Source of the DNA: Botryllus schlosseri
Taxonomy: Eukaryota
Direction: 5' to 3'
DNA: 64,000 nucleotides
Assembly: GCA_051294905.1 (NCBI GenBank)
Contig: CM119372.1
Location: 37,758,001-37,822,000 of the forward strand
Both the position numbers and the translations under genes were made by a program. The notes under the pieces are model-generated. The model had not been told where the DNA came from and did not search any database. It saw nothing but the letters and a program-made list of their open reading frames with translations. This document shows positions 2,575 to 23,100 of the stretch, piece after piece. Every line of letters starts with the position of its first letter. The first letter of the stretch is position 1.

Positions 2575-2800
2575 NNNNNNNNNNNNNNNNNNNNNNNNNN
2601 NNNNNNNNNNNNNNNNNNNNNNNNNNNNNNNNNNNNNNNNNNNNNNNNNNNNNNNNNNNNNNNNNNNNNNNNNNNNNNNNNNNNNNNNNNNNNNNNNNNN
2701 NNNNNNNNNNNNNNNNNNNNNNNNNNNNNNNNNNNNNNNNNNNNNNNNNNNNNNNNNNNNNNNNNNNNNNNNNNNNNNNNNNNNNNNNNNNNNNNNNNNN
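2575..2800. other. Assembly gap (226 N)
   Basis: Run of N. Confidence 1.
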
Positions 2801-3047: not shown

Positions 3048-6000
3048 GTTAGCAACTACTACCCGGACAACATATTTTGCAGGTAGAGATGCAACACAGT
3101 GCTTTGTGTGGCAATTAGCATTGTAACGTCTCAAGAGCACAACTTTTATCGAAGGTTATTTTCACACGAACCGAAACCTCTCAGGAGTTCGAACCATCCC
3201 TAATGATCAATTGATCATGAATCGTTCTCATACCTCTGTTCCGATTGTGGTAATCTCTCGGTGACATGGTTCCATCCTGTAAGTCATTATCTCCATACGC
3301 CCAAATCACAGTCGTAGCTCCTTCCTAAATGGACAGACATGTACGAAATGTGACGATTGCAACAATTTTCACGCATTCTGGCATGCCTTAATCATAGCAT
3401 CATCCTTGTCACCCGTATCAAGTATCCGCAGAAAAGTCACTGTGGTGCGGGAGCCTCTTTCAGAAAAGTCATACCATTCGACATTCGGAACACGGTCCAC
3501 TGCGGGTACCCCATTTCGTTCGGAGTGAGCATCCTTACAGAATAGAATAAAACGAACATGAAATAGTGCATACATTTCATCTTGCTAATACAGAATATAA
3601 CTTGAAGACGCCAATTTTTTAATCAAGTCGCAGTCAAGCATAGAATTCATTGAAGGAATTGCATACGTGGATTTACAATATGGAAGAACAAATATCAATA
3701 AAAGGAATCAGATCCGATCGACATGGGCATTTCTGATACAAACGTAGACCTTTGTACGTGGCACAGCACAAATTTTATTTTTACGTACATCTGGTGCTGT
3801 AATTTGTTGAAAATAGTTTCCAGATCCGGGATTATTACCGGAAAGCATTGGATTTCTCTTCGGGTATGGGAGGTCGCCTATATGAGAGATCCTCGGAGTT
3901 CGAAGTGAAATCAAAATTATGAGTCGCTGTTACTCAGCTTCTTGGTGACAGCAAAAATAGGTTCGATATAAATATTCCGCTTCAATATTCTGTATCGTCT
4001 TTAGACCACATCTATTAGTTGCGAACATCGTTTCACCTACTGTGCAATCTACTTCCATCCTGATTGATAGCCAACTGCAAAAGTGAAATGACACTTGTAA
4101 TTAAATTCGGCCTAGGAGTATGTTGAGAGGCAATTGCGCCGTATATAAGCCAAATAGATTGTTTGTGTTCAATAAAATCTTTGAAAATGATAGTCATTCC
4201 ATATGTGTTAATAAGCCTAATGGATTTTGAAGTAGATACATCTTCTAAGCCAGGCCTGGGCAAAGCGCGACCAGCGGGCCAAATGCGGCCCGCGAAGCCA
4301 TTCTGTGCGGCCCGCGAAAGGTTGCTTGGAATTCATAAAATTAAACCTGCTTTTTGAATGTTCATGAATGGTCTAAAACCATAGGCTGTACCAACTAAAC
4401 AGTAGCCTAAACAGGTAATTCGTTTACTTTGAAGCCTGTTCATTCATATGCCACGATTACGCTGCCTATATACGTAAGCTACCTCGCATGCGTAATCCAG
4501 ATGCAAAATAAAGGCAATGTGGCAAAGTATTGAGTAACAATTATATTCACAAGAAATCACTATTTCAATATAGTTTAGGTAAAACCTTCTTTGTGGCCAT
4601 TGTCGGATAGGCTACGTGTTTCAAATTGTTACGTGAGGCGTTTCCAAATCCCTAATTCGAAAACAAGTCAATCAGTGCTCGCGATTACTATATGACTCAT
4701 CATATCGATAACCGATAAAGGATGAATGTCAAAAAGAGAAAGCCGAAAGCTGAAATTCAAAGAAGGTTTAGAGCACTAAATATTTGTATACTGGAGTTGG
4801 GGTAAACCCGTCCTTTTAGTTTTTACCGAGCACGAAACACTCTGTCTGGCTGAATTTAAGAAAACTTCGCTCAATATCAAGGCTATTTGAGCTGCACACT
4901 GTTCGGAATGCAGCAATCAAGACAAGCTCTGTACTATCCCATATACATCACAGTGCAGTTGTTCTCGAACTGAGGGGCGTGAATGCATCTGAAGGGAGGC
5001 GCGAAGCTGAAGATAAATGAAAAAATTTTTCGCGCTTCGCACGATTCAACCCCAGCTTCTACTTTATTGCTCTGTTTATTGTCTCATTTTAATATTACAG
5101 AATTCTCTCATTAACAACCATAACCTTCCATGTTATCAAACTATCCGTCGGGATTGCTAGCATGCTGGTTGCTCTTTTTAATATGTTGTGATATCGTGAT
5201 AAGGGGGTGGGCGCGAAATTTTTCACCATCATAAAGAGGTGTGTCTAAAAAAGTTTGAGAACCAATGTTTAGTGTGGATGGGTGGGTATTTGAGTTGAGT
5301 GGTGCTTAGCTGCCAAGGCTTTGTGGACCAGAACCGCCCATATCGCTCCCTTGAGCCCAGCGCCCCCCATATCGCCCACTCAGCGTTTCCGCCCCCTTCA
5401 AAATCTCCAGCGGTTAAGAACCACTGTTCTAGAGACTAGAGGTGGGGAATGGGGCTTCGGAGCATAGTGCACAAGTTAATTACTTAAGTGGCCATAGGTT
5501 GGCAAGCACTCGATTGATGTGTGATTGCATGTATTAATTGCTAACATCGTCTCCATTCCTGCCCAATCTACTTTCATGTAATTTCACCCTAATGAATATT
5601 CAACGGCACATTTAGAGTAACACCAGCAATTTTATTGAAGCATTCTAGGGGTCAAGTGGGTAGCAATAGCATCAACGTCGTTTATGTTTGGGTTCATTAA
5701 ATCTTCGAAAGGATAAATCAAATAAATGTGCTAAAGTCGCTTAATGGAATTTAGAGTAGACAAATTTTTTAAGCCATCATCAATTCACCATGCATCATAT
5801 TCGTTGAGCTGTAATGTATCTAATGATCATGCGAACACTCTACGGGTGACTGTTGCAGTGTTGCTGTTTGATTCTAAATGCATTCCTATCTGGGTATAAA
5901 TGATACCTGCATCCGTGAATTTGTAGTTGATACAATTTATAAGCAATCATATTGAATCATAATCATTGAGCCAGAAGATGTATTTAATGATCTCACGAAT

Positions 6001-9000
6001 GTCGCTATTGACAGAGTAAAACTGATTGATTCGAAATACATTCCTATCCAGGTATAAATGAAGCACTTCTAATTTGAAGAAGCCATAATTTGAAGAAAGA
6101 GCTCAGCGTCTATGGTGTACTCAGCCATGGCCCGAAGACTTGAATGTCATAGGGTGTAAGTATTTAGATTACTAATAGTTATTGCGTGCGAAGGAGCTAA
6201 CTTTCCATTATTTTAGAAAATTCTAGATTCTTGCTTCCGCTTCACGGGTGAATCATGACGAGCTCGCCATCGTTTCTTCAAAACTTTACGGCAAAGTCTA
6301 GCCCTCAAACACCATCAGCAGACATCAGCCCGCATGCGGTTGCTGTAGTATGGAGTGTATTTGGAATGCTAGCATTCGTAGGAATAATTGCGAACATCAC
6401 AATTATCATTATCCTGCTTAGAATGAAATCCAGTAATTTCACTTTGATCGTGACCGGCCTTAGTTTTTCTGATCTTGTGTCGGCATTAAACAGTCCTTTC
6501 TATATCTACTCGACTCTAAACTGGAATCACTACGAATTGCCATGGGTATTTTGCTACACGACACTTCCGTTTGACATCGGAACCTCCATGGTGACGGAAC
6601 AACATGTATTACTGCTGAGCATAATCCGGCTTCGCAGTTTAGTGTATGCCTTCGATTCTCGCCGTGATAGTATGTCCGTACAGTCGTGTCGCAAACTGAT
6701 CCAGGTATCATGGTTTATTTCATTTTCTCTCATGATTTTGCCGATGGTATTGCAAACCCAGCAAGTGAGTGATGATGATGGTAGCATGTGCACTTTTGGA
6801 GAGAAGGGGTTAGTGTGGTTGAATGTGGCTACAGCAATCTCGGTGACAATAGGAATATTAGTACCGATACTTTTGATTGTCGGCACCTGCGTAGCGATCG
6901 TTTTCTTACTCCATCGCCGAAGAGCATCCTCCATTGCTCCGGCTACCAGCAAGATGTCGAAGAAGAGAGAAAATCAAGCGCTTTTTCAACTAAAAGCCAT
7001 CATCGTTTCTTTTCTGCTAGGGTACGGCATCAATTATTGTGCACAAATGTCCTTTCTCGTCAATATGAGTCACGCACCGAACCTCTTCCTGGCATTAGTT
7101 TTTGTGCCGCACGCGGCGCTTCGCGTGACCGAATGTCTCAACCCGTTTCTCTACTATTTCGCGTCGAGCGAAATTAAGAAGGAAGTGCAACGCTGCAGAA
7201 GAAACTTGGTCAAATTCGTCAGACAACGATTCATTTTTGCTGCAAATGAGACTGCTACTAATACTACTACTACTATCACAACTATTGCTAGTAATGAAGA
7301 GACTGGTTAAGCAATTATTAACTGATGAATTTGTTTTACGGAAACGATTCCTTTTTCTATTCCTGACTATATACATAGGGTTAAAATTAAATGAAACTGT
7401 ATTCGAAACACATTTGTTTAAAACCTGATTCAAGGGTTGTTGATTTTAGCCATAATCAACACCTGTATGTAAAAAGACCACTTGAGGCCACAATATTTGT
7501 TTCAATTGTACGCATGTCTACGACATACATTGCTCAAGTGCTATATTGTATACTTATATTGAAGAGGTACTATCTGTTGATATAGAGAGCAAGATGGATT
7601 GGAATTAAAATGGAATTGTAATTGAAACACATTTCTTTAAAATCTGTCCTAAAGTAGGCCTACCTATTCGTGATTATTATGCCAGTGTCATTTAATATGT
7701 AATTACGTGTTAATGACTTCTTGTGCAAATTAACGTCACGGTACATGGTCGAAATGAATTATTCTATTATGACCGGTTTTCAAAATGCATATATTTATAA
7801 CCTTATTGTTATACATTTTTAATCGGGTAAGATTTAAAATACAAAATATTTTAAATGATGCCCTCACTATATATTGCAGTGAAGTGAAGTGAAGTGCATT
7901 CTTTCATGGTACATAAATATACTCATTGCAATGTATTTATGTGTGTCCCATTTTGGGAACGAAACTAGGATGGAAAAGGCCACCGTTGCACAACTGCACA
8001 ACGTGAAACAGGATTGAGGGATTTATCGTAGTAAATTGACGTATAGTGGGAAAGGATCCAAACACACGGGTGCTCAGAATAGTCTAGTCCAGGGCTCAAA
8101 CTCTTTGTGACTGCGCAGCGCGCACCCTTTCGAAATTATCTGCCTGTATGGCGTACCCCTTAAAATAATGATTCATAAAGTGCAAGCAACTGAGAAACTT
8201 AACACAACAACCTACGTCTTTACAACTCCAAACATTATTTCACTGTGATTTATGAACTGGTCGCCACTCCACAAGTAAATCTTTTCTTGGAAGTGTTTCG
8301 GGAAGACACACCCGTAAATGCTGGATACGCTATTACCATACTAGACCAGTCCGATAAGCTATAGCCTGCTAATCATATAATTGTACATGTAGGCGACTGC
8401 GGTTGGTTCTGGTAAAACTAATTTGAAGTACATAGTAGGCTACGGAATAAGTCTCGTCACCTTGAAAGTAGAGAAATAGAAATTCGCTACAATTAATGAG
8501 GATAAAGTGAATAAAGTTACACGGCAATATAAAAGCATAACGATTTAAGCCTTATAAACGATGCGATCGCAAAAATAAATTATCCCAGAACTGTGGTCGG
8601 TTTTACAGCCTCATAGACTACATGCCAGTCTGAGTCCTTCTGATACTCTTAAATCATAATTCCAATCGAAGTTAGAATGTGACATCATCTGTGGGGGGCT
8701 GCCAGTAAAACTACACTGAAACCGCTGCAAAAACTACAACATCAGGCTCTACGTATCACAGCCAGGACCCCAACGGGACCAGGACGTGTGTCCCACAAAT
8801 CACTCCTCAAAAGATTCCGTGTTCTAAACATAAACCATTTTCGGAAACTAGAAATTCCCAAGTTTATGTATCAGTTCCACGGCGGCCACGGCCCCGAAAA
8901 CTTCAATGACTTCTTTACGTCTGTATCAAAAGTGCATCAGTACGGCGCTCGTCCACGTCGTCGAACCATCATACGGTGGACAAAAATATTATCGCTCTAT

Positions 9001-12000
9001 CAAATATGCCGGACCTGATTTGTGGAAGAGTATCCCGCCGGATATTCGACAGTCATCGAACATGTCTACGTTCAAGTCAAAATACAAATCATTTCTGCTG
9101 CATCAATACTAGTTAGCCCTCACCGGACCACGACCTGACCTATCGATCTCGCCCTCTGACACATGACATCTTTTGTATCACCTGTCCGTTGATAATATCT
9201 TCTTTTACTTTTCATTCAGTGTGGATGCCTTTTTTATATAGCATAGATCAGGTATGTATCTGATTTCGAAGACTACTCCAAGTCGCTTCGTGACCTTCCT
9301 ATCTTTCATTGTATCGCAGTCTTATATGGTGTATTGAAATGATGGAATTCCTAGCAATAAATTGAATTGTATTTAATTGAATTGATTTGTCACGTAAACG
9401 TTAAACTCGCTATTGTAGAAAAGTTTTCTGCTTAACCCTGTAAATTCTCTCGCGTACCCCGGTGTCAGAACCCCTGGTCTAGTCTAAAACTAAAGCAAAA
9501 CATGACCATGCTAATGTCAGTTGCTCACGAGTCATCAAATATATCGGCTTAGTGTTTAACGTGCAAGCCTGGATGTCACATATGCTCCTTGAATTGCTCT
9601 CGACCATCTGATAGAAATCAGTTTTATATGCAGTTAGGAATGATGACTATAGACATGTATCATATTGACATTTCATCAAAGTTTGTCAATCTGAGCAAAC
9701 GGATTTTAATTTCGTTTTGATTAATTAATGTCCAACGAGAAATTCCATTCAATAAAATGACATTGGAACATGGTGATCGATAAGACTCAAGTCACATATT
9801 CGGTATCCGATTCGAGTTTGCTGTGATTCGATTTTGGCCATTTCTATTCAGATGTGACTTTTTCCCATGTCCCCAGCTTCACAGCCGGCGGTTCATACCA
9901 AGCTGTAAAAAGTGGTCCGATACCCATTTGGAGTTGGTAAGCCATGACTTGAAGTGTGAATCATGCATTAATTGCATATATCGCTTCGATATCTCTCCAA
10001 TCTGTATTTTCGCAGTAATCATCATTCGAATGCAATTTTATGGTAATAGATGTAATTATATTTGGCTTGAGAGCATTGCCAGCACCAATTGCATAAGAAT
10101 AGCATCAAAATCATTGATGTTCGATTTTATCAAAATCTTTGAAAGGATTGATCTATTGACATGTGCTAATTTAGCTTAATGTGATCTGGAGTAGATACAA
10201 TTTCCAAGACATCATCACGCAACACACTAATTCAGCTATAGATATCTAATTATATCAGGAGTGTGGAAAGCGCATGACTCTTGCTGATTGATTTTAAATA
10301 TATTCCGATGAGGGTGTAAATGAAGCTGATATCCGTGCTGAAGATGCCATACTTCGCCGATGGAGCTCAGCGCATATGTGGTACTCGAGACGGCCCAAGG
10401 CGATAAATTTGAATATCGTGTGAGTATTTCGATTAGGCTACTTAGCAAGGTACTGACTGTGAAGGCGCTAACTTCTCATTCCATTAGCACATTATAGATT
10501 CGTTCTTCCGCTTGGTGGCTGATTCATGACGACTTCGCCTTCGTTACCTCAAAATATCACGACAAATTCGAGCATTGAAACACCATCATCAGACATTAGC
10601 CCGCATGCGCTCGTTGTAGTATGGAGTATATTTGGAATGCTGACAGTCGCTGGAGTGATTGCAAACATTGCAATGATCATTATCCTGTTTAGAATCAAAG
10701 CCAGTAACTTTACGTTAATCGTAACCGGCCTCAGTTTTTCTGATCTTGTATCTGCATTAAACAGTCCTTTCTATGTATATTCTAATCTGAACTGGCATCA
10801 GTACGAATTGCCGTGGATATTTTGTTACACGACACTTCCCTTTGACACCGCAACCTCAATGGTCACGGAACAACATGTATTACTGCTGAGCGCAATCAGA
10901 CTTCGAAGTTTAGTGTACGCGTTAGATTCTCGCCGTGATGGTATGTCTGTACAGTCGTGTCGCAAGCTAATCCTGGGATCGTGGTTTATTTCGTTTTCAG
11001 TCATGATTTTGCCAATGTTCTTGCAAGCGCAGCTCATATATGATAGTTATGGCAGCATGTGCTCTTTCGGAAAGAAGGGGTTAGTGTGGTTGAATGTGGC
11101 TACTATAATTTCGGTGACAATAGGAATATTAATACCTATGGCTTTAGTCGTCGGCATCTGCATAGCGATTGTAATCTTTCTGCGACGCCGCAGAACGTCC
11201 TGCATTTCCCAATCTACCAGCAAGTCGTCAAAGAGAAAAGAAAGTCACGCCCTTTTTCAACTAAAAGCCATTATCATTACCTTTCTGGTGGGTTACGGCA
11301 TTAATTATGGTGTACAAATGTCCTTCTTCGTCGATAGAAGTCATGGGCCGAATTTGTTCAAGTTATTGGTTTTCGCGCCGCACGCAGCTCTTCGCGTTAC
11401 CGAATGTCTCAACCCGTTCCTGTATTATTTTGCGTCGACCGAAATTAAGAAGGAAGTGCAACGCTGCAGACGTAGCGCGATCGAATTCTTCAGGAAACGA
11501 TTCATTTGCGCTGGGATATATCCTGCTGCAAACACTTCTAATACTACGGCCACTGCTAGTAGCACAGAGATAAGTTAGTTATTTCGTAAATGATCGATTT
11601 GAACCACGGGAATGGGCTCTTTTCTGTCCATGGCTGAATTTAAAACACGGAAGATGAAAAGTGACCGTGTTTAATCAATCATTTTTATAAAAATAGCATT
11701 CACAACTACAATATTTGGTTTATCTATGTATACATACACGACATAGAATCGTCGTAAGTTACTCTATCCTTGTAATAAATAAATATTTTATCGTGATAAA
11801 ATAAACATGAGCTTTACTAAGCTGTAACTCAGTTGTTCTCAACCTTTTTGTGTTCGCGGACCCCTCTTGAACCTTCACGGACACCCCCCTTCCCCCCGGA
11901 CCCCCAAAATTTTAGAGCACGTCTTGCTCAATTATCGCGAAACCATCATATGTCTTGTGCAAATATTAACCGTATAGGCTAGTGATAAACAGCAGCAAAA

Positions 12001-15000
12001 TGTCTTTTCTTCAAAAATCATCATACTATTTATGTAGAAATTGGGTGGACTATTATTTGAAGGCGATTTCTGTAGCAGTGTAGCTGCATTTCTTGAAATC
12101 CGTGATTTTGTCTCGAAAATCTGCGTTTTCGATTTGATATGAACGAGTGCCGAAAATACATTTCCGCCAATATATATGATGGCGAACATAATAATAACGC
12201 GAACGCTTCCGATTCCGACGAGACATTTGGGTATGATAGTCAAGGATGTAGCTCATCTTTATAAGTTATTCCGGAATATTGGCTACGTATAGGCTATCAC
12301 AGGAGAAAATGGGTTTTGCAAACATTTCGAAGTCACCCTGATTGACCTGCGCGACTGCGACTTATATATTTTACAAGCCCAGCAAAATGTCCATTCTGTT
12401 GATGTGAGTCGTTTAGCAGCGATGAAGTGAAAGTGCCTCGTGATTTCCCCAATTTAAAGAAATACAAATTAAGTAATTAATCATTTTGCAAATTTAGAGG
12501 CTTCGCAGATCCCCTGAAAATGCTTCGCGAACTCCCGGTTGAGAACCGCTTTTCTCTCGCTATCTATATTATTGCTATCTATAAACGGTTGTGCTGCATC
12601 ATGAGAAGATACCGAGAGTTATTACGCATAGTGTATATTCCAAATGTGTCATAATGATGATGATAATACCTGTTTAGATATCACAGGTGCACCTGTGTAG
12701 TTCGCGAAGGTTTATTCCATGTTATGATATCACAAATCGACACGTGTCGTTGTTTTAGTAGTAAGGTTCATATAATGTTGAATGTGACCAAAGTCACATC
12801 CGTCGTTCAACTGCATGACTTTGAAGATAGTTTTGCTGATGTCAATAAGGAGCTGCTGAAATTTGATATATTTAATTGTCAATTCCGATGAAATCACTGA
12901 AAACTATGCCACTTTTAGCCTACGTTATGTGTTGATTATGTCGATTTGAATCCATGAAGACACGTCACTGTTGCGTAACTTGAACCAGGGATATTTGGGT
13001 TACCATATTGCATACTACCGCTATTTCTAGAGCACGTAGATGTCATGATCATGCTGTATGGTCGAAAATAATGAAGCCATTATATGATAAAACTCCCAGC
13101 TCATTATAAGGCTTGTGCTTATAACCTTGTATAGTATATTCATATTGAAATGAAACCGAATACCTTCAGCTGACACTCGTGACGGGTAATCGTCAGCAAC
13201 TAGTAATTAATTGGAAAAAACATTGTATATCAACAATCGTATCTCTTATAACCTTAAATAAAGTACGATTCAATGTAATTTGCATATTGCGAGCTTTCTT
13301 TCGTTCTTTCATTTTACATAAATATACTCATTGCAATGTATTTGGATCCGTCTTAGTTTTGCGTACGAAAGATAAGTGGAAAACAGTCACTACAGTCACA
13401 GGATTGAAGGATTGTTCAGTTTAAATTGATGTATGGGTTGCTAGTACGTTTAGAACGGCAGTTGACCGTGCTCGTATTGGTTTGCTGTAAAATTATAATT
13501 TATGTCGAAAAATATGAATAGTCAATAAAATAATATCTGATATTTGCTGTGGGCGCGCGGTAACATTCCAGAAATTTATTTATATATAATAATGAATTCA
13601 TAATTTTATTGTGTCCTGTATAGCATTATCCTATACTGCATGATTTATCAGCATCGATGCAGTTCAATTTACTGGCTGTTTTACCCGATTTCTCAAATTC
13701 CCTACGTCGGCATACGATACGGCGTGTATATGTGTGTGTAGCTAACGGATACTAGCCGATTAAACCACATATATGAAGGTACATACAACTGTTAAGCTTC
13801 ACAATTTTCCTACCCATAACGGTGGCAATTTCCAACGGATTATTTGTTCTAATGTCGAAGTTAACATTATGCGCTTCATATATCGCGAGGATCAGCTTCA
13901 CTTACAGACAATGCATTGCCATTACTAACGCAACACAAACTTGTACAGAATATTAGTATGAAAAACTTCACGCAATCCAAATCAGCAACATACATCACTA
14001 CCATATGTGATCGAATTATGCTCTGATTAATATTTCTTTTGTTGTTGCCCATAAGTCCGAAACGCGGATATCAATCAGTACTCACAATTAAATAAATGTC
14101 ACCATCTTTCACGCCTGTAACGATGATATCGGCTTCTTCCATCGTCCCTGACTCGGCGAAACCCAAACCCATCCATCCGTTTGTGGGAGCAGTCATCTAA
14201 AGTGTTCACAAATTCAGATAACATCTAGTGCATCAAGCATAACTACAATAGAGATGATCGTATATATATTTTTAGATGTATTCCCAATTTTTAAGGGTAA
14301 GTTTAATGTCCTACTACAAATGTAGATCCTATACTCCATTAACTATCACACCAAAATCCAAGATCGAATCCATAAATAATGAATCAGGATTCATTGCAAT
14401 ATCGCATAGTACTTTGTTAATGTTTTCAAATTTTCGGGGAAAAGATTGGCGGAGTGTGCTAAGTGACACGGTTACGACAGCATTGGTTGGTTGTTCGAGT
14501 AACGGCTCTGCCAAGTTTCTATGTGTTAGACTGCAGAGGTCTCAAACACGCGGCCCGCGAGACCATTTTGTGCGGCCCGCGACGGCATTTTGGATTTCGT
14601 AGTCTTCAACAACATTTATCTACCATTTTATTTTTTGATTCGAGAACTTTCGATCTGAAACTACTCCAGAGGCCAGAAACTACTCATCAACTTCACTATT
14701 ACATCACTTTCAAAAGTTACGACGCAGTCGAAGATTACCTATTACGTGACATTACTTGTTTATGGTGGTTATTGGTTACACATGACCCGTTGATGATCCG
14801 TACTGAAAATTGTGATTTGGATTTGGGGGTGACCTTTTGTAGAATTACTCGAACTCGAACTCAGTGGGTGATAAAATAAAAATATCTCGAGTTGAGTTGC
14901 GTCAAAAGATACAATCAGAGAAGGAATTTTGTGACGCGGAACGCCGTGACTTGGTACAACCACGGACGCTACAAACTATCAAACTGGTATGGAAAATAGT

Positions 15001-17204
15001 AAATTATCAAAAGGTCGTAGCTTGCATTTCGTAGCTTATTTAGATATCTAATCAGCTCGGTATGGCAACCATTGGCATGATTTTGTCCTCTTGGTGTATA
15101 GTTGGTTACATCCTGTGTCATCCTGGGTATCTTTATCCATGTTATTATCCCCAATTAAATGTGGCGAGCATAAAGTAGTCGTAATCTACGCTTCACAGCT
15201 GTAACACAAATGGATTCTTTGGCGATTGGACATTTCTATTGCTATGGCACAGTAATCATTATATTCAAGTTGTTATTGATCTGTTCAAATATTCGAAGGG
15301 AAATCTAACACTGATTTAATTTGACTCTGGTAATGACATGATCAATAGCTTAGTTATCAGGAGTATACCCGAGACCCGGATTTGGCTGTACTGCTCCAAT
15401 GCTCTGATATCAGATCACTCTTTGTAAAATTCTAAAATTCTACCGCCAGCTGCAAAATTATAACGCGACAGCTTTTACGATGTCCTGATGCGTTTGTACT
15501 CTCGCACGGTGTCTACAACTACTTATTTTGGCAACTTGTGCCAGGTACAGCAACAAATTTATTCAAATATCTAAAAATGTTAATTTTCGTGCCAGGCGTG
15601 AATTCACAATAGTAAATCACATTTTACGTGCGTGTGGAATGTCAGTCTGCAAGGTCCCGTCAAATAAGGCCTACTTGGAAATACATTGAATTCCCCAATT
15701 ATTGGTGCTGCGGCCCGCGGCGCCATCAAAAATAGGAAACTGGCCCGCGAGCACATTTGAGTTTGAGACCTCTGTGTTAGAGGATCTGGGCTCCTCATCG
15801 CTGACCGCAATGCATATACAGTACGAAAAGCCCAGATGATAAAGCGAAGTCGAGCTTCGAATATCGGCACCAAAATACACTTACGAGCGCGCATGCAAGC
15901 AAGAGAGATAGAGGATGAATGGGTTCGTGGCTTGAAGTCTTTCGAATAGAGTACAGAACGCGAAAGACAATGAACATTAGAACAATCATTATCATGGCTC
16001 AAATAACCTGATTAGGCTATAAGCGCCAAAATTGTTCAATAAAACAAAATTACAAATTTCATGTCCAAGTCCAATTACAAATAGTGATCACTGCTTATCT
16101 TTAATAAATACTAATGCAGAATCTCGGAGAGGTTAATAGGTTTCGTACTTCCAAATTTGTGACAGCCTGTAGACAACGAGTATCCAACATTTTTACGCCG
16201 TATCTCCCTTTGAAAAGATTCGAAAAATAATTGCGCCCCAATTTTCAATATTTAAAAAAGAATTAAGAAACGTTCTTTTAATAAGACAAATAGTTTTACG
16301 ATAACAAGTAGTTAAAATGATGAAATGATAAAGATAAAACAACTAATAAACATGATTGTAGATTAATTAGCTATAACGTATTCAGTTAAAGTGATGGTTG
16401 ATCTTGTTTTGCTGGTTTGGAGGCGGAAGGATGAAAGAAAAGTTAAGATCAAGAAGTAGCTGATTGCTCTACCATTGTTTTTTATAATATAATTTTTTTG
16501 TTGTTTTAATGGAGTAGACTTAGATATGATGCATTTTAAAATAATTTCATTGACCCCTTGAACAAAACGTTAAACAAGGTGAAAAACTGCTATAAAGTTG
16601 ACAATGTCAATTAAATTTAAAGCTCGTAGTTTCGCAATGCTAATCGAATTTTACTCACCTTCGATTCTAAATATACTATTTTTGATATACAATTGTTTCC
16701 TATCCTTTACTAATTGTGGACGATTTTCCCTAAAGAGTGTCAGCCGAAAGTATTTTGGTTCATTTCAATGTGAATATACTATTACAATATATTGAAGTTC
16801 TGTACCTCCAAGAAGCTCTTCGAATATATATATATATATATATTGAGGTCGCGTACCACTCTCACAAATATTACAAACTAGGACATCAAAATGTAACAGT
16901 AGAGTATAAAACAACAATGTACATTCTACGAATGATATAGGTCTCTACATGGTGTATTTTGCTGGATAAAAACAGCGTCAAAAGGAAATTTGCGCTAGCT
17001 CAAATATGTAACGAAAGTAATTCCTGGCTGAGCGAAGAAATCAAACAAACTTACCTCAATGAGCAATTCATTGCGGTTGACTATCCAATGTATGGCAACA
17101 TCTTCACTCAAATCTTCCATATACTCAAAGGTAGAACTCGTACTCTTTTGTCTTGCAACGCATGCTTTTATCAATATCAATAAAAAAATACACCTCCAAA
17201 TCAT
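3048..17204 (-). CDS. Second DOMON-domain (MOXD/DBH-like) gene A, 5' portion; 3' exons not found in the window
   Basis: Exon 1 17055-17204 (signal peptide MIWRCIFLLILIKACVA...VAIHWIVNRNELLIE|gtaagt). Exon 2 14086-14196 (MTAPTNGWMGLGFAESGTMEEADIIVTGV...|gtgagt). Exon 3 3387-3533 (DAHSERNGVPAVD...FLRILDTGDKDDAMIK; 147 nt, the same length as gene B exon 3). Exon 4 3234-3324 (EGATTVIWAYGDND...YHNRNR). Tentative exon 5 3048-3142. The first three intron positions and phases match gene B. Confidence 0.8.
4956..5267. mobile_element. hAT MITE, same family as 24371-27851
   Basis: CAGTTGTTCTCGAAC...GTTTGAGAACCAATG; shared internal sequence ATCAAACTATCCGT; TSD degraded. Confidence 0.7.
5820..6226 (+). 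promoter_or_regulatory. Putative GPCR1 promoter (TATAAA at 5895 and 6053) and 5'-UTR intron 6156-6226
   Basis: GTAAGT...TTCTAG intron with equivalents upstream of GPCR2 (10420-10497) and GPCR3 (20552-20619); the block CATTCCTATC..GGTATAAATG occurs twice. Confidence 0.5.
6255..7310 (+). CDS. Class A (rhodopsin-like) GPCR, 351 aa, uninterrupted ORF, orphan
   Basis: Seven hydrophobic segments; TM1 GIIAN, TM2 LSFSD, TM3 Cys (FCY) plus ECL2 Cys (MCT), TM4 Trp, TM5 Pro (LVP), TM7 NPFLY; N-terminal sequon NFT. Confidence 0.93.
   Translation: MTSSPSFLQNFTAKSSPQTPSADISPHAVAVVWSVFGMLAFVGIIANITIIIILLRMKSSNFTLIVTGLSFSDLVSALNSPFYIYSTLNWNHYELPWVFCYTTLPFDIGTSMVTEQHVLLLSIIRLRSLVYAFDSRRDSMSVQSCRKLIQVSWFISFSLMILPMVLQTQQVSDDDGSMCTFGEKGLVWLNVATAISVTIGILVPILLIVGTCVAIVFLLHRRRASSIAPATSKMSKKRENQALFQLKAIIVSFLLGYGINYCAQMSFLVNMSHAPNLFLALVFVPHAALRVTECLNPFLYYFASSEIKKEVQRCRRNLVKFVRQRFIFAANETATNTTTTITTIASNEETG
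8090..9476. mobile_element. hAT non-autonomous element containing a LINE fragment
   Basis: Termini CAGGGCTC... and ...GAACCCCTG; TSD GTCTAGTC (8082-8089 and 9477-9484). Confidence 0.8.
8690..9385 (+). mobile_element. 5'-truncated LINE 3' end (L2/CR1/Crack-like ORF2 C-terminus + 3' UTR)
   Basis: WGAASKTTLKPLQKLQHQALRI...FMYQF...SIKYAGPDLWKSIP...FKSKYK; AATAAA and an (ATTGA)n-like tail. Confidence 0.8.
10526..11578 (+). CDS. Class A GPCR paralog, 350 aa, uninterrupted ORF, orphan
   Basis: Collinear with 6255-7310 with the same motifs (LSFSD, LSAIRL, ECLNPFLYYF); flanking DNA is also homologous. Confidence 0.93.
   Translation: MTTSPSLPQNITTNSSIETPSSDISPHALVVVWSIFGMLTVAGVIANIAMIIILFRIKASNFTLIVTGLSFSDLVSALNSPFYVYSNLNWHQYELPWIFCYTTLPFDTATSMVTEQHVLLLSAIRLRSLVYALDSRRDGMSVQSCRKLILGSWFISFSVMILPMFLQAQLIYDSYGSMCSFGKKGLVWLNVATIISVTIGILIPMALVVGICIAIVIFLRRRRTSCISQSTSKSSKRKESHALFQLKAIIITFLVGYGINYGVQMSFFVDRSHGPNLFKLLVFAPHAALRVTECLNPFLYYFASTEIKKEVQRCRRSAIEFFRKRFICAGIYPAANTSNTTATASSTEIS
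11830..12551. mobile_element. hAT MITE, family shared with 37859-38611
   Basis: CAGTTGTTCTCAACC...GGTTGAGAACCGCT; internal sequence is the reverse complement of the 37859 copy. Confidence 0.75.
14534..15774. mobile_element. hAT non-autonomous element; internal ~1 kb repeated at ~17870-18846
   Basis: TIR CAGAGGTCTCAAAC...GTTTGAGACCTCTG with GCGGCCCGC subterminal motifs; near-TSD TGTTAGA(C/G). Confidence 0.75.
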
Positions 17205-17379
17205 TCTGCGCCGATATCAAATCTATCATGTATATTCCTTAGCCGATGCGCTTTGCTATTCACCGTAGGAATCACAATGCCATAATATCTTACTCCTGGA
17301 CTTTGGTGGAGTCGTTTTGATGACGTACAAAGTTTGTAAATCGAACTGCGTAAATATGCCCTAATAGGCGTCGAATTCT

Positions 17380-17600
17380 AGCAATTTTTAAGTAATCGTT
17401 CGTTAATGAGCGTGAACGCAGAATTCAATGCGGAAGCCGTCATAGACTTCGTCCTTTTTACTAACCAAAGGCCATACTTTGTCGCGACATGTATGATCGA
17501 ATAAGTTTTAATGACATAATTGATACCACACCACACAAAATTTAAAACTGTGTTCATGACAGATTCTCCACTTCGTTCCGAATGTGCGTCTTTAATGGCG
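17380..17600 (-). pseudogene. Relic DOMON exon-3-like segment, paralogous to 3387-3533
   Basis: FILAIKDAHSERSGESVMNTVLNFVW versus FILFCKDAHSERNGVPAVDRVPNVEW. KDAHS codons differ only at third positions. Similarity is lost downstream. Confidence 0.5.
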
Positions 17601-17869
17601 AGGATAAATTTCGAAGAAAATATTACCATTATTGAAACAATTGAAGTGACATTTATCCTTTTCGCACCAATACGCCACAAATATCGTCACAACTCACATA
17701 TATTGTCACGTATGGTGACGTACTGAATCAAATTGAGAGAATATTATATGGAAAAAGAACATTTGGTGCTGGGCCAGTATTGTTTGACATTCCCATTCAC
17801 TGGTATATCTGTCCGTCTCCTATCACAGCAACGGTACCATGCGGTGGAAGATTAGCAATTGCGTCGCAT

Positions 17870-18846
17870 TGCCTGTTTATGACGGCGCGACCTTTCGTAG
17901 AATTACTCGAACTCGGACTGAATGGGTGATAAAATAAAAATGACTGGAGTTCAGTCGGGCCACCCGTTATAATCAGAAACGGACTTGTGACTTGGAACGC
18001 CGTGACTTCGTACATCCACGGACGTAACATTATTATCAAACTTGGATGGGGAATTGTAATATATCAAAAGGTCGTAGCTTGAGTTGCGTATTAAGCTGTC
18101 TAAGCAGGTCGGTATGACAACCATTGGCATTCTGTTAACCCTATTGATGTATAGTCCCTGGTCAGTTACAACCTGCGTCATATTGGCACTCTTTATCCAT
18201 GTTATTATTGCCAATTAAAGGTGACGAGTAGGTATAGTGGTACACGCTTCACGATTCACAGCTGTAACACCAATGGATTCCTCGGCGAATCGACATTTCT
18301 ATTACTATGGCACATTGATCAATATATCAAATTTGTTTTTGATCTGTTGCAATACTCGAAAGTAAATCTAACGCTGATTTAATTTGATTTTCGTAATGAC
18401 ATGGTCAATAGCCTACTTATCGGTATATGCCTGAGACCCGGATTAGGCTACACTGCACAAATGATCTGATATCAGATCAATCTTTGTTAAATTCTAAAAC
18501 ATCTACCTATAATATTGGTACGTCAAATGTTCTCTAGCTGTGAAATTGTGACGCGACAGCTTTTACGATGACCCGATGCATTTGTAACCTTGCATGGTCT
18601 CTATAACTAATTATTTTGACAAACTATGCCAACAATTTTATTCGAATATTTAGAAATATGATATCTGTCGTGAACTCACAATAGCAAATGACATTTTATA
18701 CACGTGTTGTAATGCCAGCCTGCAAGGTGCCTTCTAATAAGCCATACTTGGTAATACATATAATACCCCCATATTGTTGCTGCGGCGCGCGGCGCCTTCA
18801 GAAGCTAGGAAATTGGCCCGCTAGCACAGTTGAGTGGGAAGCCCCT
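17870..18846. repeat. Diverged second copy of the 14.8-15.77 kb segment, retaining the right hAT-like end
   Basis: Shared blocks GTAGAATTACTCGAACTC, ATCAAAAGGTCGTAGCTTG, GACGCGACAGCTTTTACGATG; ends ...GGAAGCCCCTG. Confidence 0.75.
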
Positions 18847-20788
18847 GTTTCACGCTCGGTTAGTGATAGGTCGACTCGAGTAATGACTTGTGACTTATGT
18901 AAAGTTGAAAAATATTTCCGTATTATCGGTGGTTAGACACCAGAAAGTAAGACACTGTCACTTTGACCCCATGTTCGAAACAATATTTTGTCAGTCTCCA
19001 CTGCATCACACCCTCAAAAAGCGCTTGTCGTGCCTTCCCATCCCCTTGCAGGAATCAAGTAAAATTATTTGGAGATTCATCTTCCTCACCTCATTTCTTT
19101 TTCTAGTCATTTCATCAGCGTGACTTCTAGATGCGATTCAGTGTGCCTAACGGCGAACGCAAGACTTGTTTGTTTCAATAGGTTTACTACGTACAAACAT
19201 TGCAAGTATCAATGTTTTTTTTTCAAATCATTTAGCATGAACTGCCTAGTCGCGCAAAGAGCGAAATGTTTCGAAGTATAGATGAATGACATTTGTCAAA
19301 AATATCAGTGCATTTCCATGACCATTCCATGTTGTCGTGCTGAAATTTGTGTATGGAGAGACGTGGAACCGATGGATCAAAAATTGCAAAATGATATCTG
19401 CCCCTCAAATATTCAGCCAAGAATAGCAGATCTTTTGATGGCTCACAACACTTTGATCCGAGCTCTACCCATCGCGGATATTTACATGAATATCCGCATT
19501 TTCATGAAACAGTTATGAACGTTCCAAATTTGTTGCTTGAACGTATCATTGGTCCCCACCCGGTGGGTCTAAAGGCACACGACCATGGGACCTATGAGAC
19601 ATACGCTCATAAACTCGAATTATTCATCTTGTTTTGTTGTGTACTGTCATCTAAGCTACAGCTAGCCAATGGAGGCTCTTTCGTCGCCACCTTCAAGAAT
19701 AAACTGGATTATATTAACTCAACTTCTGGCGCAAAATCACGTTTCGATTTACGCCCAAACTTATGCAATTATTGGCACATACATATTATCCGTAAATCGA
19801 CATTTTGACTTTCAAATACCTCGTTATAGCGATAAAACACCACAGCTAATTATGATTTGCGGCCTCTATATATGAAGGCGTGTTTCTGTTGTTAAGTGAT
19901 TAGTTGGTCCAACTATTTTGCTTGATTTGACTATAGTACCATAGCCCCCCTCACAAGGATATGTGACAAATTATCATCAGGAGATCCCGCAATGCGTGAA
20001 GAAAAATCTTCATTCACAGGAAATTCAGAAAATATTACATACCTATCTATGAGGCGATCGCGCGGTCGCGACCCATACTTTAATAACCGCCCTTATAAAG
20101 GTATAATACATGGCCAGGAAACTGGGCAGTGGGCACCAATTGACATGCGACGACGAATGTTATGCAACAGAACAAGTGTGATCATATTTAGCTTGAAAGG
20201 ATTTTAGCATGTCGATATCTCAAAATCTCATTCGAATCATGGAAGTGTGACTCCATCGAACTTTCTGATGGGATTAAGAGATGTGTATATAGGCTACCAC
20301 ATTAGCTTTTAATGGAGCTGACAATTTATGCATTTTCCAAATCAATCTTAAAGCATTAGTATTTATTGGGCCAGCTGCATATCAACATTTCAACAGATAG
20401 CTCTCTGTGATTGATTTTACATTAACTCCAGTGAGGATTTGCCATATATGAAGCTCGCAACGATGTCGAAGACTCCCTCGTTTGTATCTCAAACTCGGGT
20501 GGGCTACTATATACGCATGGCATAAGATGGGATAACTATGATCAATCTGACGTAAGTATTTTTACTCCCCAGATTTTTTGATTGGAAGCACCGTAATGTC
20601 AGTAATTCTATATTAACAGAATCTGTTAGCAGGCTGTAGGTTCGTGCATCAGCCACGCCTGGGAATCATGGCCAGCCTACCTTCGTCGTTTCCTCAAGAC
20701 ATAGCAACACCATCAAGCAATCAAACATCCCTCGATCTCGGCCTGACTACGCTTACTGTAGTATGGAGTATTTCTGAGATTTTGACGA

Positions 20789-21672
20789 GTCCACGTCGTC
20801 CAAATATCATATGATCGACCGAAAAGATCATCGCTCTATCAAATATGCCGGACCTGATGTGTGGAACCAGTGGTGGCCCTACGAACGGGGGGGGCCTGGG
20901 CGAGACTTACCGGGGGGGGGCTATAAGTATCTATTCGTAACTTCTGGGGGGCTCCGCCCACCTTCCGCATCGGTTATTATTAGCTATCTATCTTTCACCA
21001 CCGCAAAAGGTTTGCCCAGGTCCTGGATTCGGCCATGTCTGTTTTGCATGTGTGCAAGGATAGACTACATCAAAACTAAGTAATTCTACCGCATGCAGAG
21101 GCGTGATGATTATCGGGATACGGGACTTTTCTAACAAATCCAGTGATTTGATGATGATTGACACATCTGTACTGAATCATATTCTTGCTTGGTACTCGGA
21201 TTTCCATGTTTATTCGTCATTCTCCTTGAAAAAAGCGCAAAATCCAAATAGGGGGGGCCCCTTCGACCAGGGGGGCCCCGGGCGACCGCCCACCTCGCCC
21301 ACCCCAAAAGCCACCACTGTGTGGAACAGTATCCCGATGGCCATCCGGCAGTCGACGAGCATGTCCACATTCAAGTCGAAATACAAGCAATAATTACTAA
21401 ATAAATACAGTCCATCCTCAAGATTACCGGACCACGACTGACCTATCGATCTCGCTTCCTATGACATGCCGCCCTATTTCTTGTCGCTTCCTTTTTCTAT
21501 ACTATCTTCTTTACTTTCATTCCGTGTGCATGCCTCCTCTTTACATCGCCTAGGCCAAGGTGGGTGTCTGATTCCATAGACAACTCCTATAGTCGCTTCG
21601 ACATCTTCCTGTCTTTTCATTGTATCGCATTTTTTGTGGTGTATTGAACTGATAAAATTGCTAATAAACCAA
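20789..21672 (+). mobile_element. LINE 3' fragment (same family as 8690-9385) inserted in GPCR copy 3
   Basis: CGCTCTATCAAATATGCCGGACCTGAT and GACCTATCGATCTCGC are shared with the 8.9-9.3 kb copy; AATAAA at ~21663; possible short TSD TGACGA. Confidence 0.8.
20868..21319. mobile_element. hAT MITE inserted in the LINE fragment
   Basis: TIR CAGTGGTGGC...GCCACCACTG; perfect TSD TGTGGAAC. Confidence 0.9.
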
Positions 21673-23100
21673 TGACGATGATGATTGTAGGTTTGCTTGA
21701 CAACACAGCGATGGTCATTGTCCTGCTTAAAATCAAGTCCAGTATATTCACCGTGATCGTGACCGGACTATGTTTTTGTGATCTTCTATCAGCTTACAAC
21801 AGCCTCTGTTATGTAGGCTATATCAGTCCACATACAGAGATAGTTTTGAATTACCGTGTTTGTTTGTTTTTTGCTACACGATCATTACCTGTGACGTTGC
21901 GACCACAATGGTGACGGAACAACACGTACTGCTTCTGAGAGTAATACGGTTCCGTAGTATAGTGTATGCTCCCGATTCTCGAGGTGATTGTATTATTGTG
22001 GAGTCGTATCGCAAACTGATCATATGATCATGGTTTCTATCGTATACCGTCGTGATATTTCCAATTATCGTTCAATCTGAACACGTATATGATGATGGCA
22101 GTAGCATGTATTGTGCACTTTCGGGAAACACGGATCCATGTGACTGGCATTGCCAGCTGGAATATCGGCATCGGTAGGAATAATAATACCGATGTTACGG
22201 TTGTCAGTCTGCCCGTAGTGATAGTAATCGTCTTAATACGCCGCAGAATATCCTCGGTCGCCGATTCTGTCAGCAAGTCGTCAAAGGAGAAGAACCAAGC
22301 CATTTCCCAACTAAAGGCAACGGTTATTAATTTTCTGATAGGTTACGGCGGGCTAATATTGTACTTTTTCTAAATTGATTACCACCAGAACACGTTCTTT
22401 GCTTTGATATTCGTGCCACACGCGGTGCTCCGTGTGACGGAATGTGTTAACCCTTTTTTGTACTATTTCGCATCTGCCTACATTAACAAGGAAGTGAAGC
22501 TATTGAAGAGCAATGCGCGCGAGTTCTTTACCTAGCGTTTCGGCTCTGCTGTTGCGCAGACTACTGCGGAATGTGCGGATGGTGCAACTGCGGCCACTAC
22601 CAAGTAGACCAGTGATAAAAAAAACCTTTTACGGCTTGCCTATCATTAGTGATCAATATCCCGCCCTTGACTGCGAATCTTGTCGCTTTTGTTTTTCTCG
22701 AATATATTCCTTGTATTGACGTCATGGGTTTTCTCGTTTGGAGGTGATACGAAGAATCCGATGGTATATTTTGCAGTCGACCAATTGCATTCCTACCGAC
22801 AGTAACCCAGCAAAGAATCCCGTATTGTATCATGTCGTAGTGAAATGACGTAATGAAGTAATGAAGTAATTAAGATCGAATGCAAGTTTAATATATTTGC
22901 TACCTCGGAGGAAGTAAAAACGCAGTTTTTTTCGCATGTCGGATCGCGGCGCTCTGACGAGAGAAATGCGACAGAATTGACTTTTAGTAACCGCATAGCA
23001 ATTATTCACCACCATAAGGGTTTTCTATAGGTCATGGCTTTTGAATCCTTTGTCCAGGGCCCAGTACCGGGCCACTGCGCTATTTTCAGAGGCCCTAGAG

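What the first reader, a model, noticed from the sequence alone, without database searches (positions are those of the whole stretch)
3534..14085. Two GPCR genes nested antisense inside intron 2 of DOMON gene A
Seen: exon 2 (14086-14196, phase-0 donor) and exon 3 (3387-3533, phase-0 acceptor) join as ...DGDIYLI|DAHSERNG..., matching gene B's ...TISYVI|DAYVSD... junction. No other exon 3 was found between them. Both intact GPCR ORFs lie in this ~10.5 kb interval on the opposite strand, and tandem duplication of the receptor appears to have expanded the intron. Inference: nested antisense arrangement allows transcriptional interference or shared regulation.
Basis: partly seen in the sequence, partly recalled or inferred. 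Interest (0 to 1): 0.7.

Follow-up and report, generated by a model that had tools for sequence, protein, structure and literature searches.

The report
Two receptor genes inside a DOMON-gene intron
Two intact single-exon receptor (GPCR) genes lie on the opposite strand inside a 10.5-kb intron of a large multi-DOMON gene of a tunicate; this is an ordinary nested-gene arrangement, it is absent from the matching gene of Styela clava, and RNA has not yet shown that the host is spliced across it.

Summary
The sequence observation holds. Exon 2 (14086-14196, -) and exon 3 (3387-3533, -) are adjacent pieces of one DOMON domain with compatible phase-0 splice sites. Two intact 7TM receptor ORFs (6255-7310 and 10526-11578, +) lie between them.

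Family profiles found 15 exon-2 and 15 exon-3 pieces in 252 kb, strictly alternating, and nothing family-like inside the intron. The spliced product aligns without gaps at the junctions to the N-terminus of a Styela clava 12-DOMON protein (46% identity, E 8e-49).

- 'Gene A' is not a small gene. It is the signal-peptide-bearing first module of a roughly 10-DOMON gene that continues about 76 kb beyond the window start.
- Its exon-3 donor is GC, whereas all 14 paralogous modules use GT.
- The intron grew through an old receptor duplication plus at least three transposon pieces.

The orthologous Styela intron is about 0.4 kb and empty, so the nesting is lineage-specific.

RNA check: four bulk RNA-seq runs (about 33 million reads sampled) gave zero reads on exons 1-2, so the splice is unconfirmed. 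Transcriptional interference or shared regulation is untested.

The scan noted nested GPCRs at two other places in this genome. This is a known kind of arrangement and of low interest.

The parts
17055..17204 (-). Host gene exon 1 (coding part): ATG, signal peptide MIWRCIFLLILIKACVA and the first DOMON strand (VAIHWIVNRNELLIE). Donor is GAG|GTAAGT, phase 0.
   Evidence: Sequence read. Exon-1 motif HMM hit at 17052-17099, E 0.0013. Met plus hydrophobic run, with no phase-1 acceptor upstream. Aligns to residues 9-55 of Styela P0002.
14086..14196 (-). Host gene exon 2 (37 codons), DOMON profile positions 26-59. Acceptor ttAG, donor GTGAGT, phase 0 at both ends.
   Evidence: The leave-one-out family HMM score is 56 bits, third best of 15 modules.
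3534..14085 (-). Host intron 2, 10,552 nt. It holds both receptor genes and transposon pieces. The same intron is 60 bp to 3.8 kb in the 14 paralogous modules here and about 0.4 kb in the Styela clava ortholog.
3387..3533 (-). Host gene exon 3 (49 codons), DOMON profile positions 61-110. Acceptor tgtaAG. The donor is the non-canonical AAG|GCATGC.
   Evidence: Leave-one-out HMM score 55 bits.
3325..3386 (-). Host intron 3, 62 nt, GC-AG. All 14 paralogous modules have GT at this donor.
3234..3324 (-). Host gene exon 4 (EGATTVIWAYG...YHNRNR + G). It ends in phase 1 at G|GTATGA. It joins a 1545-nt acidic exon outside the window (L003:4708-6252, -; G000:C2:37752708-37754252).
6255..7310 (+). GPCR1: intact single-exon rhodopsin-class receptor ORF, 351 aa.
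10526..11578 (+). GPCR2: intact single-exon paralogue, 350 aa, 72% identical in protein to GPCR1.
5498..7275 (+). Tandem-duplication unit 1 (upstream flank plus most of the GPCR1 ORF). It is homologous to 9933-11546, with a period of about 4.3 kb.
9933..11546 (+). Tandem-duplication unit 2 (upstream flank plus most of the GPCR2 ORF).
4246..5275 (.). Interspersed repeat inside the intron. Copies elsewhere in the genome are up to 90% identical, and the first look found thousands of candidates.
8566..9391 (.). Interspersed repeat inside the intron, 76-83% identical to many copies elsewhere. It also explains the similarity of 9021-9353 to 21320-21663.
11819..12555 (.). Interspersed repeat inside the intron, with a short repeat at 13132-13241. 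Repeat-derived RNA reads lie here only partially.

Best explanation
Two paralogous single-exon class-A GPCR genes lie on the plus strand inside intron 2 of a minus-strand gene. That host gene encodes a secreted protein made of many DOMON domains.

Exon 4 ends in phase 1 and splices to a 1545-nt exon about 7 kb downstream, outside the window. That exon supplies the last DOMON strand (SKKVTFL) and a 514-residue linker that is 50% aspartate. The gene then runs on through about nine more DOMON modules. It is the ortholog of Styela clava LOC120338002.

The ancestral intron was short: about 0.4 kb in Styela and 0.06-3.8 kb in the sister modules. A receptor gene came to lie in it, duplicated in tandem long ago (dS about 0.45), and transposon pieces were added. 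The intron is now 10.5 kb.

Shown here: the anatomy, the family-wide conservation of the splice sites, collinearity with the Styela protein, purifying selection on both receptors, and the absence of decay in the host exons.

Inferred: that the host pre-mRNA is actually spliced across the 10.5 kb, and that host and receptors are transcribed independently, as is usual for opposite-strand nested genes.
For: - Exon 2 and exon 3 are contiguous in the DOMON profile.
- Splice signals are canonical at both ends of intron 2, and the intron position and phase are identical in all 15 modules.
- Exon-2 and exon-3 pieces alternate 1:1 over 252 kb, with no exon-1, -2, -3 or -4-like piece inside 3534-14085.
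- Both exons are nearest to the same paralogous module, N-20.
- Leave-one-out HMM scores of the host exons are typical of the family.
- Spliced exons 1-5 have no stop codon. Residues 4-174 align to residues 9-184 of Styela XP_039261856.1 at 46% identity, E 8e-49, with no gap at any junction.
- The modules are collinear with the Styela modules 1, 2, 3, 4, 4/5, 5 ... 10, 11, 12.
- Exon 4 ends in a phase-1 donor in every module examined (10 of the 15), most downstream modules have phase-1 acceptors and no start codon or signal peptide, and the acidic exon is phase 1-1.
- The top database relatives carry 2-20 DOMON repeats.
- GPCR1 versus GPCR2: 72% protein identity, dN/dS 0.30-0.41, dS 0.42-0.53, flank divergence about 0.45.
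- The duplication is therefore old, yet about 500 nt of host coding sequence and 7 of 8 splice signals are intact. This argues that the host stayed under selection with the receptors already inside.
Against: - There is no transcript evidence. Four bulk RNA-seq runs of the same species label (33.5 million reads sampled, 6-13% of each run) gave zero depth on exon 1, exon 2 and the 3' end of GPCR2.
- The exon-3 donor is GC with further mismatches to the consensus (AAG|GCATGC), while all 14 paralogous modules have GT. It may be a weak or disabled site.
- Intron 2 is by far the longest of its kind.
- An N gap (2575-2800) lies in intron 4 and could hide sequence.
- Orthology with the Styela gene rests on best-hit collinearity, not on a tree.
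Confidence: 0.7

Rival explanations
1. The first module is no longer used. Growth of intron 2 and/or the GT-to-GC change at the exon-3 donor has recently inactivated exons 1-4. The multi-DOMON gene would then be dead or would start from a downstream module, and the receptors would simply lie between relic exons rather than in a working intron.
For: Read depth on exons 1-2 was zero. Only this module has a GC donor. Its intron is 25 times longer than the Styela counterpart. The next module, N-7, has an in-frame Met (MSVIMICGSYS), although it makes a weak signal peptide.
Against: All four exons are open. The signal peptide and family-conserved residues are retained at typical leave-one-out scores, with 46-52% identity to Styela module 1. 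The receptor duplication inside the intron is old (flank K about 0.45), so any inactivation would have to be recent. GC-AG introns do work in animals (own knowledge). The acidic exon has no start codon and needs a phase-1 upstream partner.
Confidence: 0.2
2. Exons 1-2 and exons 3-4 are fragments of two different family members brought side by side by rearrangement. They were never one transcription unit.
For: A short relic of an intron-2/exon-3 boundary lies upstream of exon 1 (17527-17608). This shows that partial copies do exist here.
Against: The parity of exon types is exact. Both halves are nearest to the same paralogue. Together they match module 1 of the Styela ortholog, including its module-specific N-terminus (YMEDL...), in one collinear alignment. 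Two orphan halves would not both stay intact.
Confidence: 0.05
3. The 3.5-14 kb interval was placed between the two exons by an assembly error.
For: There is none beyond the unusual intron length. The one N gap in this stretch of the window (2575-2800) lies outside the interval.
Against: There is no N run in 3534-14085. The two receptor copies are only about 78-80% identical, too different to be mis-joined or collapsed. Two DNA runs hold part of the adjoining stretch 11400-17399 (shares 0.44 and 0.22).
Confidence: 0.03

Closest known systems
Opposite-strand nested (intronic) protein-coding genes of animals, for example the TipE/Teh cluster in the last intron of Drosophila CG18675 and the GMC oxidoreductase cluster in a Flo-2 intron (PMC3240667)
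   Same: Several homologous genes sit inside one intron of an unrelated host. The arrangement was gained in one lineage and is absent in relatives. [quoted passage not shown] 2005).
   Different: Here there are only two nested genes, host splicing is unverified, and nothing is known about expression. The host is itself a highly repetitive multi-domain gene.
Styela clava LOC120338002 (XP_039261856.1 and isoforms, 'uncharacterized protein', 12 Pfam DOMON domains)
   Same: The N-terminal module is collinear with gene A (46% identity over 177 residues). The module order and the four-exon module structure are the same, and there are acidic or Ser/Thr-rich linkers.
   Different: The Styela gene spans 27.7 kb. 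All its intron-2 equivalents are 84-572 bp, it holds no nested gene, and there is no GPCR-like sequence within 47.7 kb.
DBH-like monooxygenases (MOXD1/DBH), DOMON plus Cu2_monooxygen domains, such as gene B in this window
   Same: The DOMON domain is of the same subfamily, with the same intron positions.
   Different: No Cu2_monooxygen or Cu2_monoox_C exons lie anywhere between G000:C2 37.66 and 37.775 Mb. The host is a DOMON-only repeat protein, not an enzyme of this family.

Membership tests
Nested (intronic) gene pair, opposite strand | The nested gene lies wholly between two consecutive exons of the host, on the other strand. | tested here: met
   Both receptor ORFs (6255-7310 and 10526-11578, +) lie between host exon 3 (ends at 3533) and exon 2 (starts at 14086) on the minus strand. 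The extent of their UTRs is unknown.
Nested (intronic) gene pair, opposite strand | The flanking host exons are joined in mature mRNA. | tested here: inconclusive
   Four RNA runs gave zero reads on exons 1-2, and the reads tool was then exhausted. Indirect support comes from conserved splice sites, 1:1 exon parity and collinearity with the Styela protein.
Nested (intronic) gene pair, opposite strand | Both host and nested genes are functional genes rather than relics. | tested here: inconclusive
   The receptors show dN/dS 0.30-0.41 and intact ORFs. The host exons are open with typical family scores, but one donor is GC and no expression was seen.
DOMON domain (PF03351) | Significant match to the family profile across the domain. 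| tested here: met
   Exon 2 covers profile positions 26-59 (E 2e-7) and exon 3 covers 61-110 (E 0.02). The spliced module aligns over its full length to Styela DOMON modules.
Rhodopsin-class GPCR (PF00001, 7tm_1) | Full-length match to the 7TM profile. | tested here: met
   Profile positions 2-260 of 260 are matched, E 1.3e-17 and 1e-16. NPxxY is present (NPFLYY), and the DRY position reads IRL (alignment). The nearest solved structures are MCHR1, P2Y12 and SSTR3, only at E 1e-9 to 1e-7.
DBH-like copper monooxygenase (MOXD1/DBH) | Cu2_monooxygen (PF01082) and Cu2_monoox_C (PF03712) catalytic domains follow the DOMON domain. | tested here: not met
   Own-genome scans find these domains in gene B (window 41430-41588, 37576-37692, 31037-31210). 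None lies between C2:37.66 and 37.775 Mb, where the host gene is.

The most novel reading that the evidence does not exclude
Antisense transcription of the receptor pair controls whether the signal-peptide-bearing first module of the multi-DOMON gene is included. Receptor-expressing cells would then switch off, or re-start downstream, a secreted DOMON-repeat protein. This would be a functional coupling selected in this lineage after the receptors entered the intron.
Probability: 0.04. Interest if true: 0.5.

Novelty: new member of a known kind. Interest (0 to 1): 0.2.

Why it matters
This matters mainly for annotation.
- Gene callers are likely to break the host at the 10.5-kb intron, or at the 7-kb intron that contains an assembly gap. 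They would then report a small 'DOMON gene A' instead of the first module of a roughly 10-DOMON secreted protein.
- The locus is a clean, datable example of how a short intron (about 0.4 kb in Styela) becomes a gene-bearing intron. A receptor gene arrived, duplicated in tandem, and transposons were added.
- It tells us nothing new about nested genes in general.

Tried and rejected
- RNA test: only repeat-derived partial reads were laid. Depth was zero on exons 1-2 and on the GPCR2 3' end, so there is no junction information.
- tblastx of the gene A region against the gene B region found no exon similarity; the two are too divergent.
- Searching GPCR1 in the 5.8-billion-protein set gave one distant hit at 37% identity. 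This genome's proteins are not in that set.
- Idea: an older duplicated unit [exon 3 + receptor], made of the relic at 17.5 kb and the degraded receptor at 21.7-22.5 kb. Rejected. The degraded copy is sister to a chromosome-13 pseudogene (80% nt identity), not to GPCR1/2 (61.5%). There is no collinear non-coding homology. The one shared flank is a transposon.
- Idea: gene A is a stand-alone 183-aa protein ending at the TGA at 3181-3183. Rejected in favour of the phase-1 splice to the acidic exon. The read-through tail fits the conserved last-strand motif poorly, whereas the spliced 'NRGSKKVTFL' fits it well.
- The closest receptor paralogues outside the intron (about -141 kb, intact; about +81 kb, pseudogene) are not inside DOMON genes.
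- The 339-aa single-exon neighbour of a Styela multi-DOMON gene is not a GPCR.
- P0004 was not on record for a contig look-up, so its longest isoform was used instead.
Full report
**1. What is in the sequence**

The window is G000:C2:37758001-37822000 of a 495-Mb eukaryotic genome.

On the minus strand, 14086-14196 is an open 37-codon piece. It is preceded by ttAG and followed by GTGAGT. 3387-3533 is an open 49-codon piece preceded by tgtaAG. Pfam DOMON matches the first at profile positions 26-59 (E 2e-7) and the second at positions 61-110 (E 0.02). They are consecutive parts of one domain and both boundaries are phase 0.

Between them, on the plus strand, lie two intact ORFs of 351 and 350 aa (6255-7310 and 10526-11578). 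Both match the rhodopsin-class 7TM profile end to end. There is no N run in the interval; the only gap in the window is at 2575-2800.

**2. Is the exon 2 to exon 3 pairing right?**

The own-genome DOMON scan showed a dense minus-strand array of DOMON exons just below the window. I fetched 252 kb around the window and built HMMs for the four exon types of a DOMON module.

- Exon-2 and exon-3 pieces occur 15 times each. All are on the minus strand and they alternate strictly.
- In the window the only pairs are gene B (54.3 kb to 50.5 kb) and gene A (14.1 kb to 3.5 kb).
- No exon-1, -2, -3 or -4-like piece lies inside 3534-14085.
- The intron position and phase are the same in all 15 modules. Every exon-2 donor is GT(A/G)AGT or a near variant of it, and every exon-3 acceptor is (C/A)AG|GA.
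- Exon 2 and exon 3 of gene A are both closest to the same paralogous module, N-20, at 61% and 48% identity.
- In leave-one-out tests gene A's exons score like ordinary members: 56, 55 and 42 bits.
- Exon 1 is at 17055-17204. It has an ATG, a signal peptide and a GTAAGT donor. Exon 4 is at 3234-3324.
- One blemish: the exon-3 donor is AAG|GCATGC, a GC donor, whereas all 14 other modules have GT. Intron 3 is 62 nt.

**3. What the host gene really is**

Every exon 4 examined (10 of the 15 modules) ends with G|GT inside the Gly codon of the YH..NRG motif, which is a phase-1 donor. Most 'first exons' of the neighbouring units have no start codon or signal peptide. Instead they have good phase-1 acceptors and long acidic or Ser/Thr-rich stretches.

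A profile of the exon-3 peptides was searched against 1.84 billion representative proteins. The top hits carried 2-20 matched stretches. Most of the top hits looked up are Styela clava RefSeq proteins, so the window comes from a tunicate. P0002 (XP_039261856.1) has 12 Pfam DOMON domains. In these proteins NRG is followed by a conserved last strand (for example TKKVELL or AKKMVL) and then a linker.

About 7 kb downstream of gene A's exon 4, outside the window, lies a 1545-nt open piece, L003:4708-6252 (-).
- It is preceded by ctgacAG.
- It begins GT|TCA AAG AAA GTC ACG TTT CTG, which makes ...NRG-SKKVTFL...
- It ends GAG G|GTAAGC, so it is a phase 1-1 exon.
- Beyond the last strand it encodes a 514-residue linker that is 50% Asp.

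Spliced exons 1-5 contain no stop. Residues 4-174 align to residues 9-184 of P0002 at 46% identity (E 8e-49), with no gap at any exon junction. The alignment includes the module-specific N-terminus, FEYMEDLSEDVAIHW against YDYMEDLEDDITLYW.

The modules A, N-7, N-16, N-20, N-23, N-35 ... N-47, N-52 and N-57 best match P0002 modules 1, 2, 3, 4, 4/5, 5 ... 10, 11 and 12, in that order.

'Gene A' is therefore the first module of a roughly 10-DOMON gene. It spans about 76 kb and is orthologous to Styela LOC120338002. It has no copper-monooxygenase domains, unlike gene B.

**4. The nested genes and the history of the intron**

- GPCR1 and GPCR2 are 72% identical in protein. dN/dS is 0.30-0.41 and dS is 0.42-0.53. 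Their non-coding flanks differ by K of about 0.45 and carry indels. The tandem duplication (period about 4.3 kb; 5498-7275 against 9933-11546) is therefore old, and both copies have been kept by selection.
- They belong to a family of more than 100 single-exon receptors in this genome. The closest relatives are an intact copy about 141 kb below the window and a pseudogene about 17 kb beyond its end. Neither lies inside a DOMON gene.
- The nearest solved receptors (MCHR1, P2Y12, SSTR3) are distant, so the receptors are orphans.
- The rest of the intron includes interspersed repeats at 4246-5275, 8566-9391 and 11819-12555, plus a short one at 13132-13241.
- In the Styela ortholog (27.7 kb) the same intron is about 0.4 kb. 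All 15 equivalent introns are 84-572 bp, no nested gene is annotated, and no GPCR-like sequence exists in 47.7 kb. Two other Styela multi-DOMON genes show the same pattern. On present evidence the nesting arose in the window's lineage after it split from Styela.
- The receptor duplication inside the intron is old, yet about 500 nt of host coding sequence, the signal peptide and seven of eight splice signals are intact. The host has therefore most likely remained under selection with the receptors inside it. This step is inferred.

**5. RNA**

One run search and one read-laying run were allowed. Four bulk RNA-seq runs of the same species label (33.5 million reads sampled, 6-13% of each run) were laid on 11400-17399. 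Depth was zero on exon 1, exon 2 and the GPCR2 3' end. Only partial reads at 95-99% identity were laid, on repeats. This neither confirms nor refutes the splice. It shows only that the host's first module and GPCR2 are silent or very low in those samples.

**6. Verdict**

The nested antisense arrangement is real at the level of gene structure, and I put it at about 0.7 that it is a working intron. The main rival, at about 0.2, is that the first module has recently fallen out of use; the points in its favour are the GC donor, the giant intron and the absence of reads.

Interference or co-regulation is speculation. For known nested clusters, expression is usually unrelated or inverse to that of the host (PMC3240667, PMC3192792).

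Nested opposite-strand single-exon genes are common in animals. This scan's first readers also noted nested GPCRs at two other places in this genome (I did not check them). Interest is low. The useful outcome is the corrected host gene model and a dated example of intron growth.

Noticed in passing
window 17527-17608 (-): A relic of the intron-2/exon-3 boundary lies 330-400 bp upstream of the host start codon. It is an 82-nt ungapped match to 3470-3551 (score 20 against 10.9 +/- 1.4 in 300 shuffles). It encodes DAHSERSG right after an AG, compared with DAHSERNG in exon 3. Its origin is unexplained; it may be a partial duplication or a dead module.
   Followed up: partly
L003:4708-6252 (-) = G000:C2:37752708-37754252: A 1545-nt phase 1-1 exon encodes a 514-residue linker that is 50% Asp and 14% Arg, built of DDDF/RRDRDDD-type repeats. 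It lies between DOMON modules 1 and 2 of the host gene.
   Followed up: partly
window 21678-22526 (+): A degraded third receptor copy with several frame breaks lies between the host gene and gene B. It is 80% identical in DNA to a pseudogene on contig C13 (19116800-19117828) but only 61.5% identical to GPCR1/2.
   Followed up: yes
window 24746-26289 (-): Two adjacent ORFs (318 and 189 aa) carry DUF4371 and hAT C-terminal dimerisation domains. This is a hAT-type transposase split by a stop.
   Followed up: no
window 31037-56060 (-): Gene B is a DBH/MOXD1-like gene. It has a signal-peptide exon at 55.8-56.0 kb, DOMON exons at 54.3, 50.5 and 48.9 kb, a Cu2_monooxygen exon at 41430-41588, and Cu2_monoox_C exons at 37576-37692 and 31037-31210.
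   Followed up: partly
G000:C2:37667000-37686000 (L004-L006): A second multi-DOMON gene seems to start at module N-72, which has the signal peptide MIFKAILVCLLLANC, and to include N-76, N-81 and N-87. Module N-43 also carries a hydrophobic Met-led stretch, so the exact gene boundaries in the array need RNA.
   Followed up: no
window 14831-15775 and 17889-18848: A direct repeat, 76% identical over about 950 bp, flanks the host's exon 1. Partial RNA reads at 95-99% identity suggest a dispersed repeat family rather than a local duplication.
   Followed up: no
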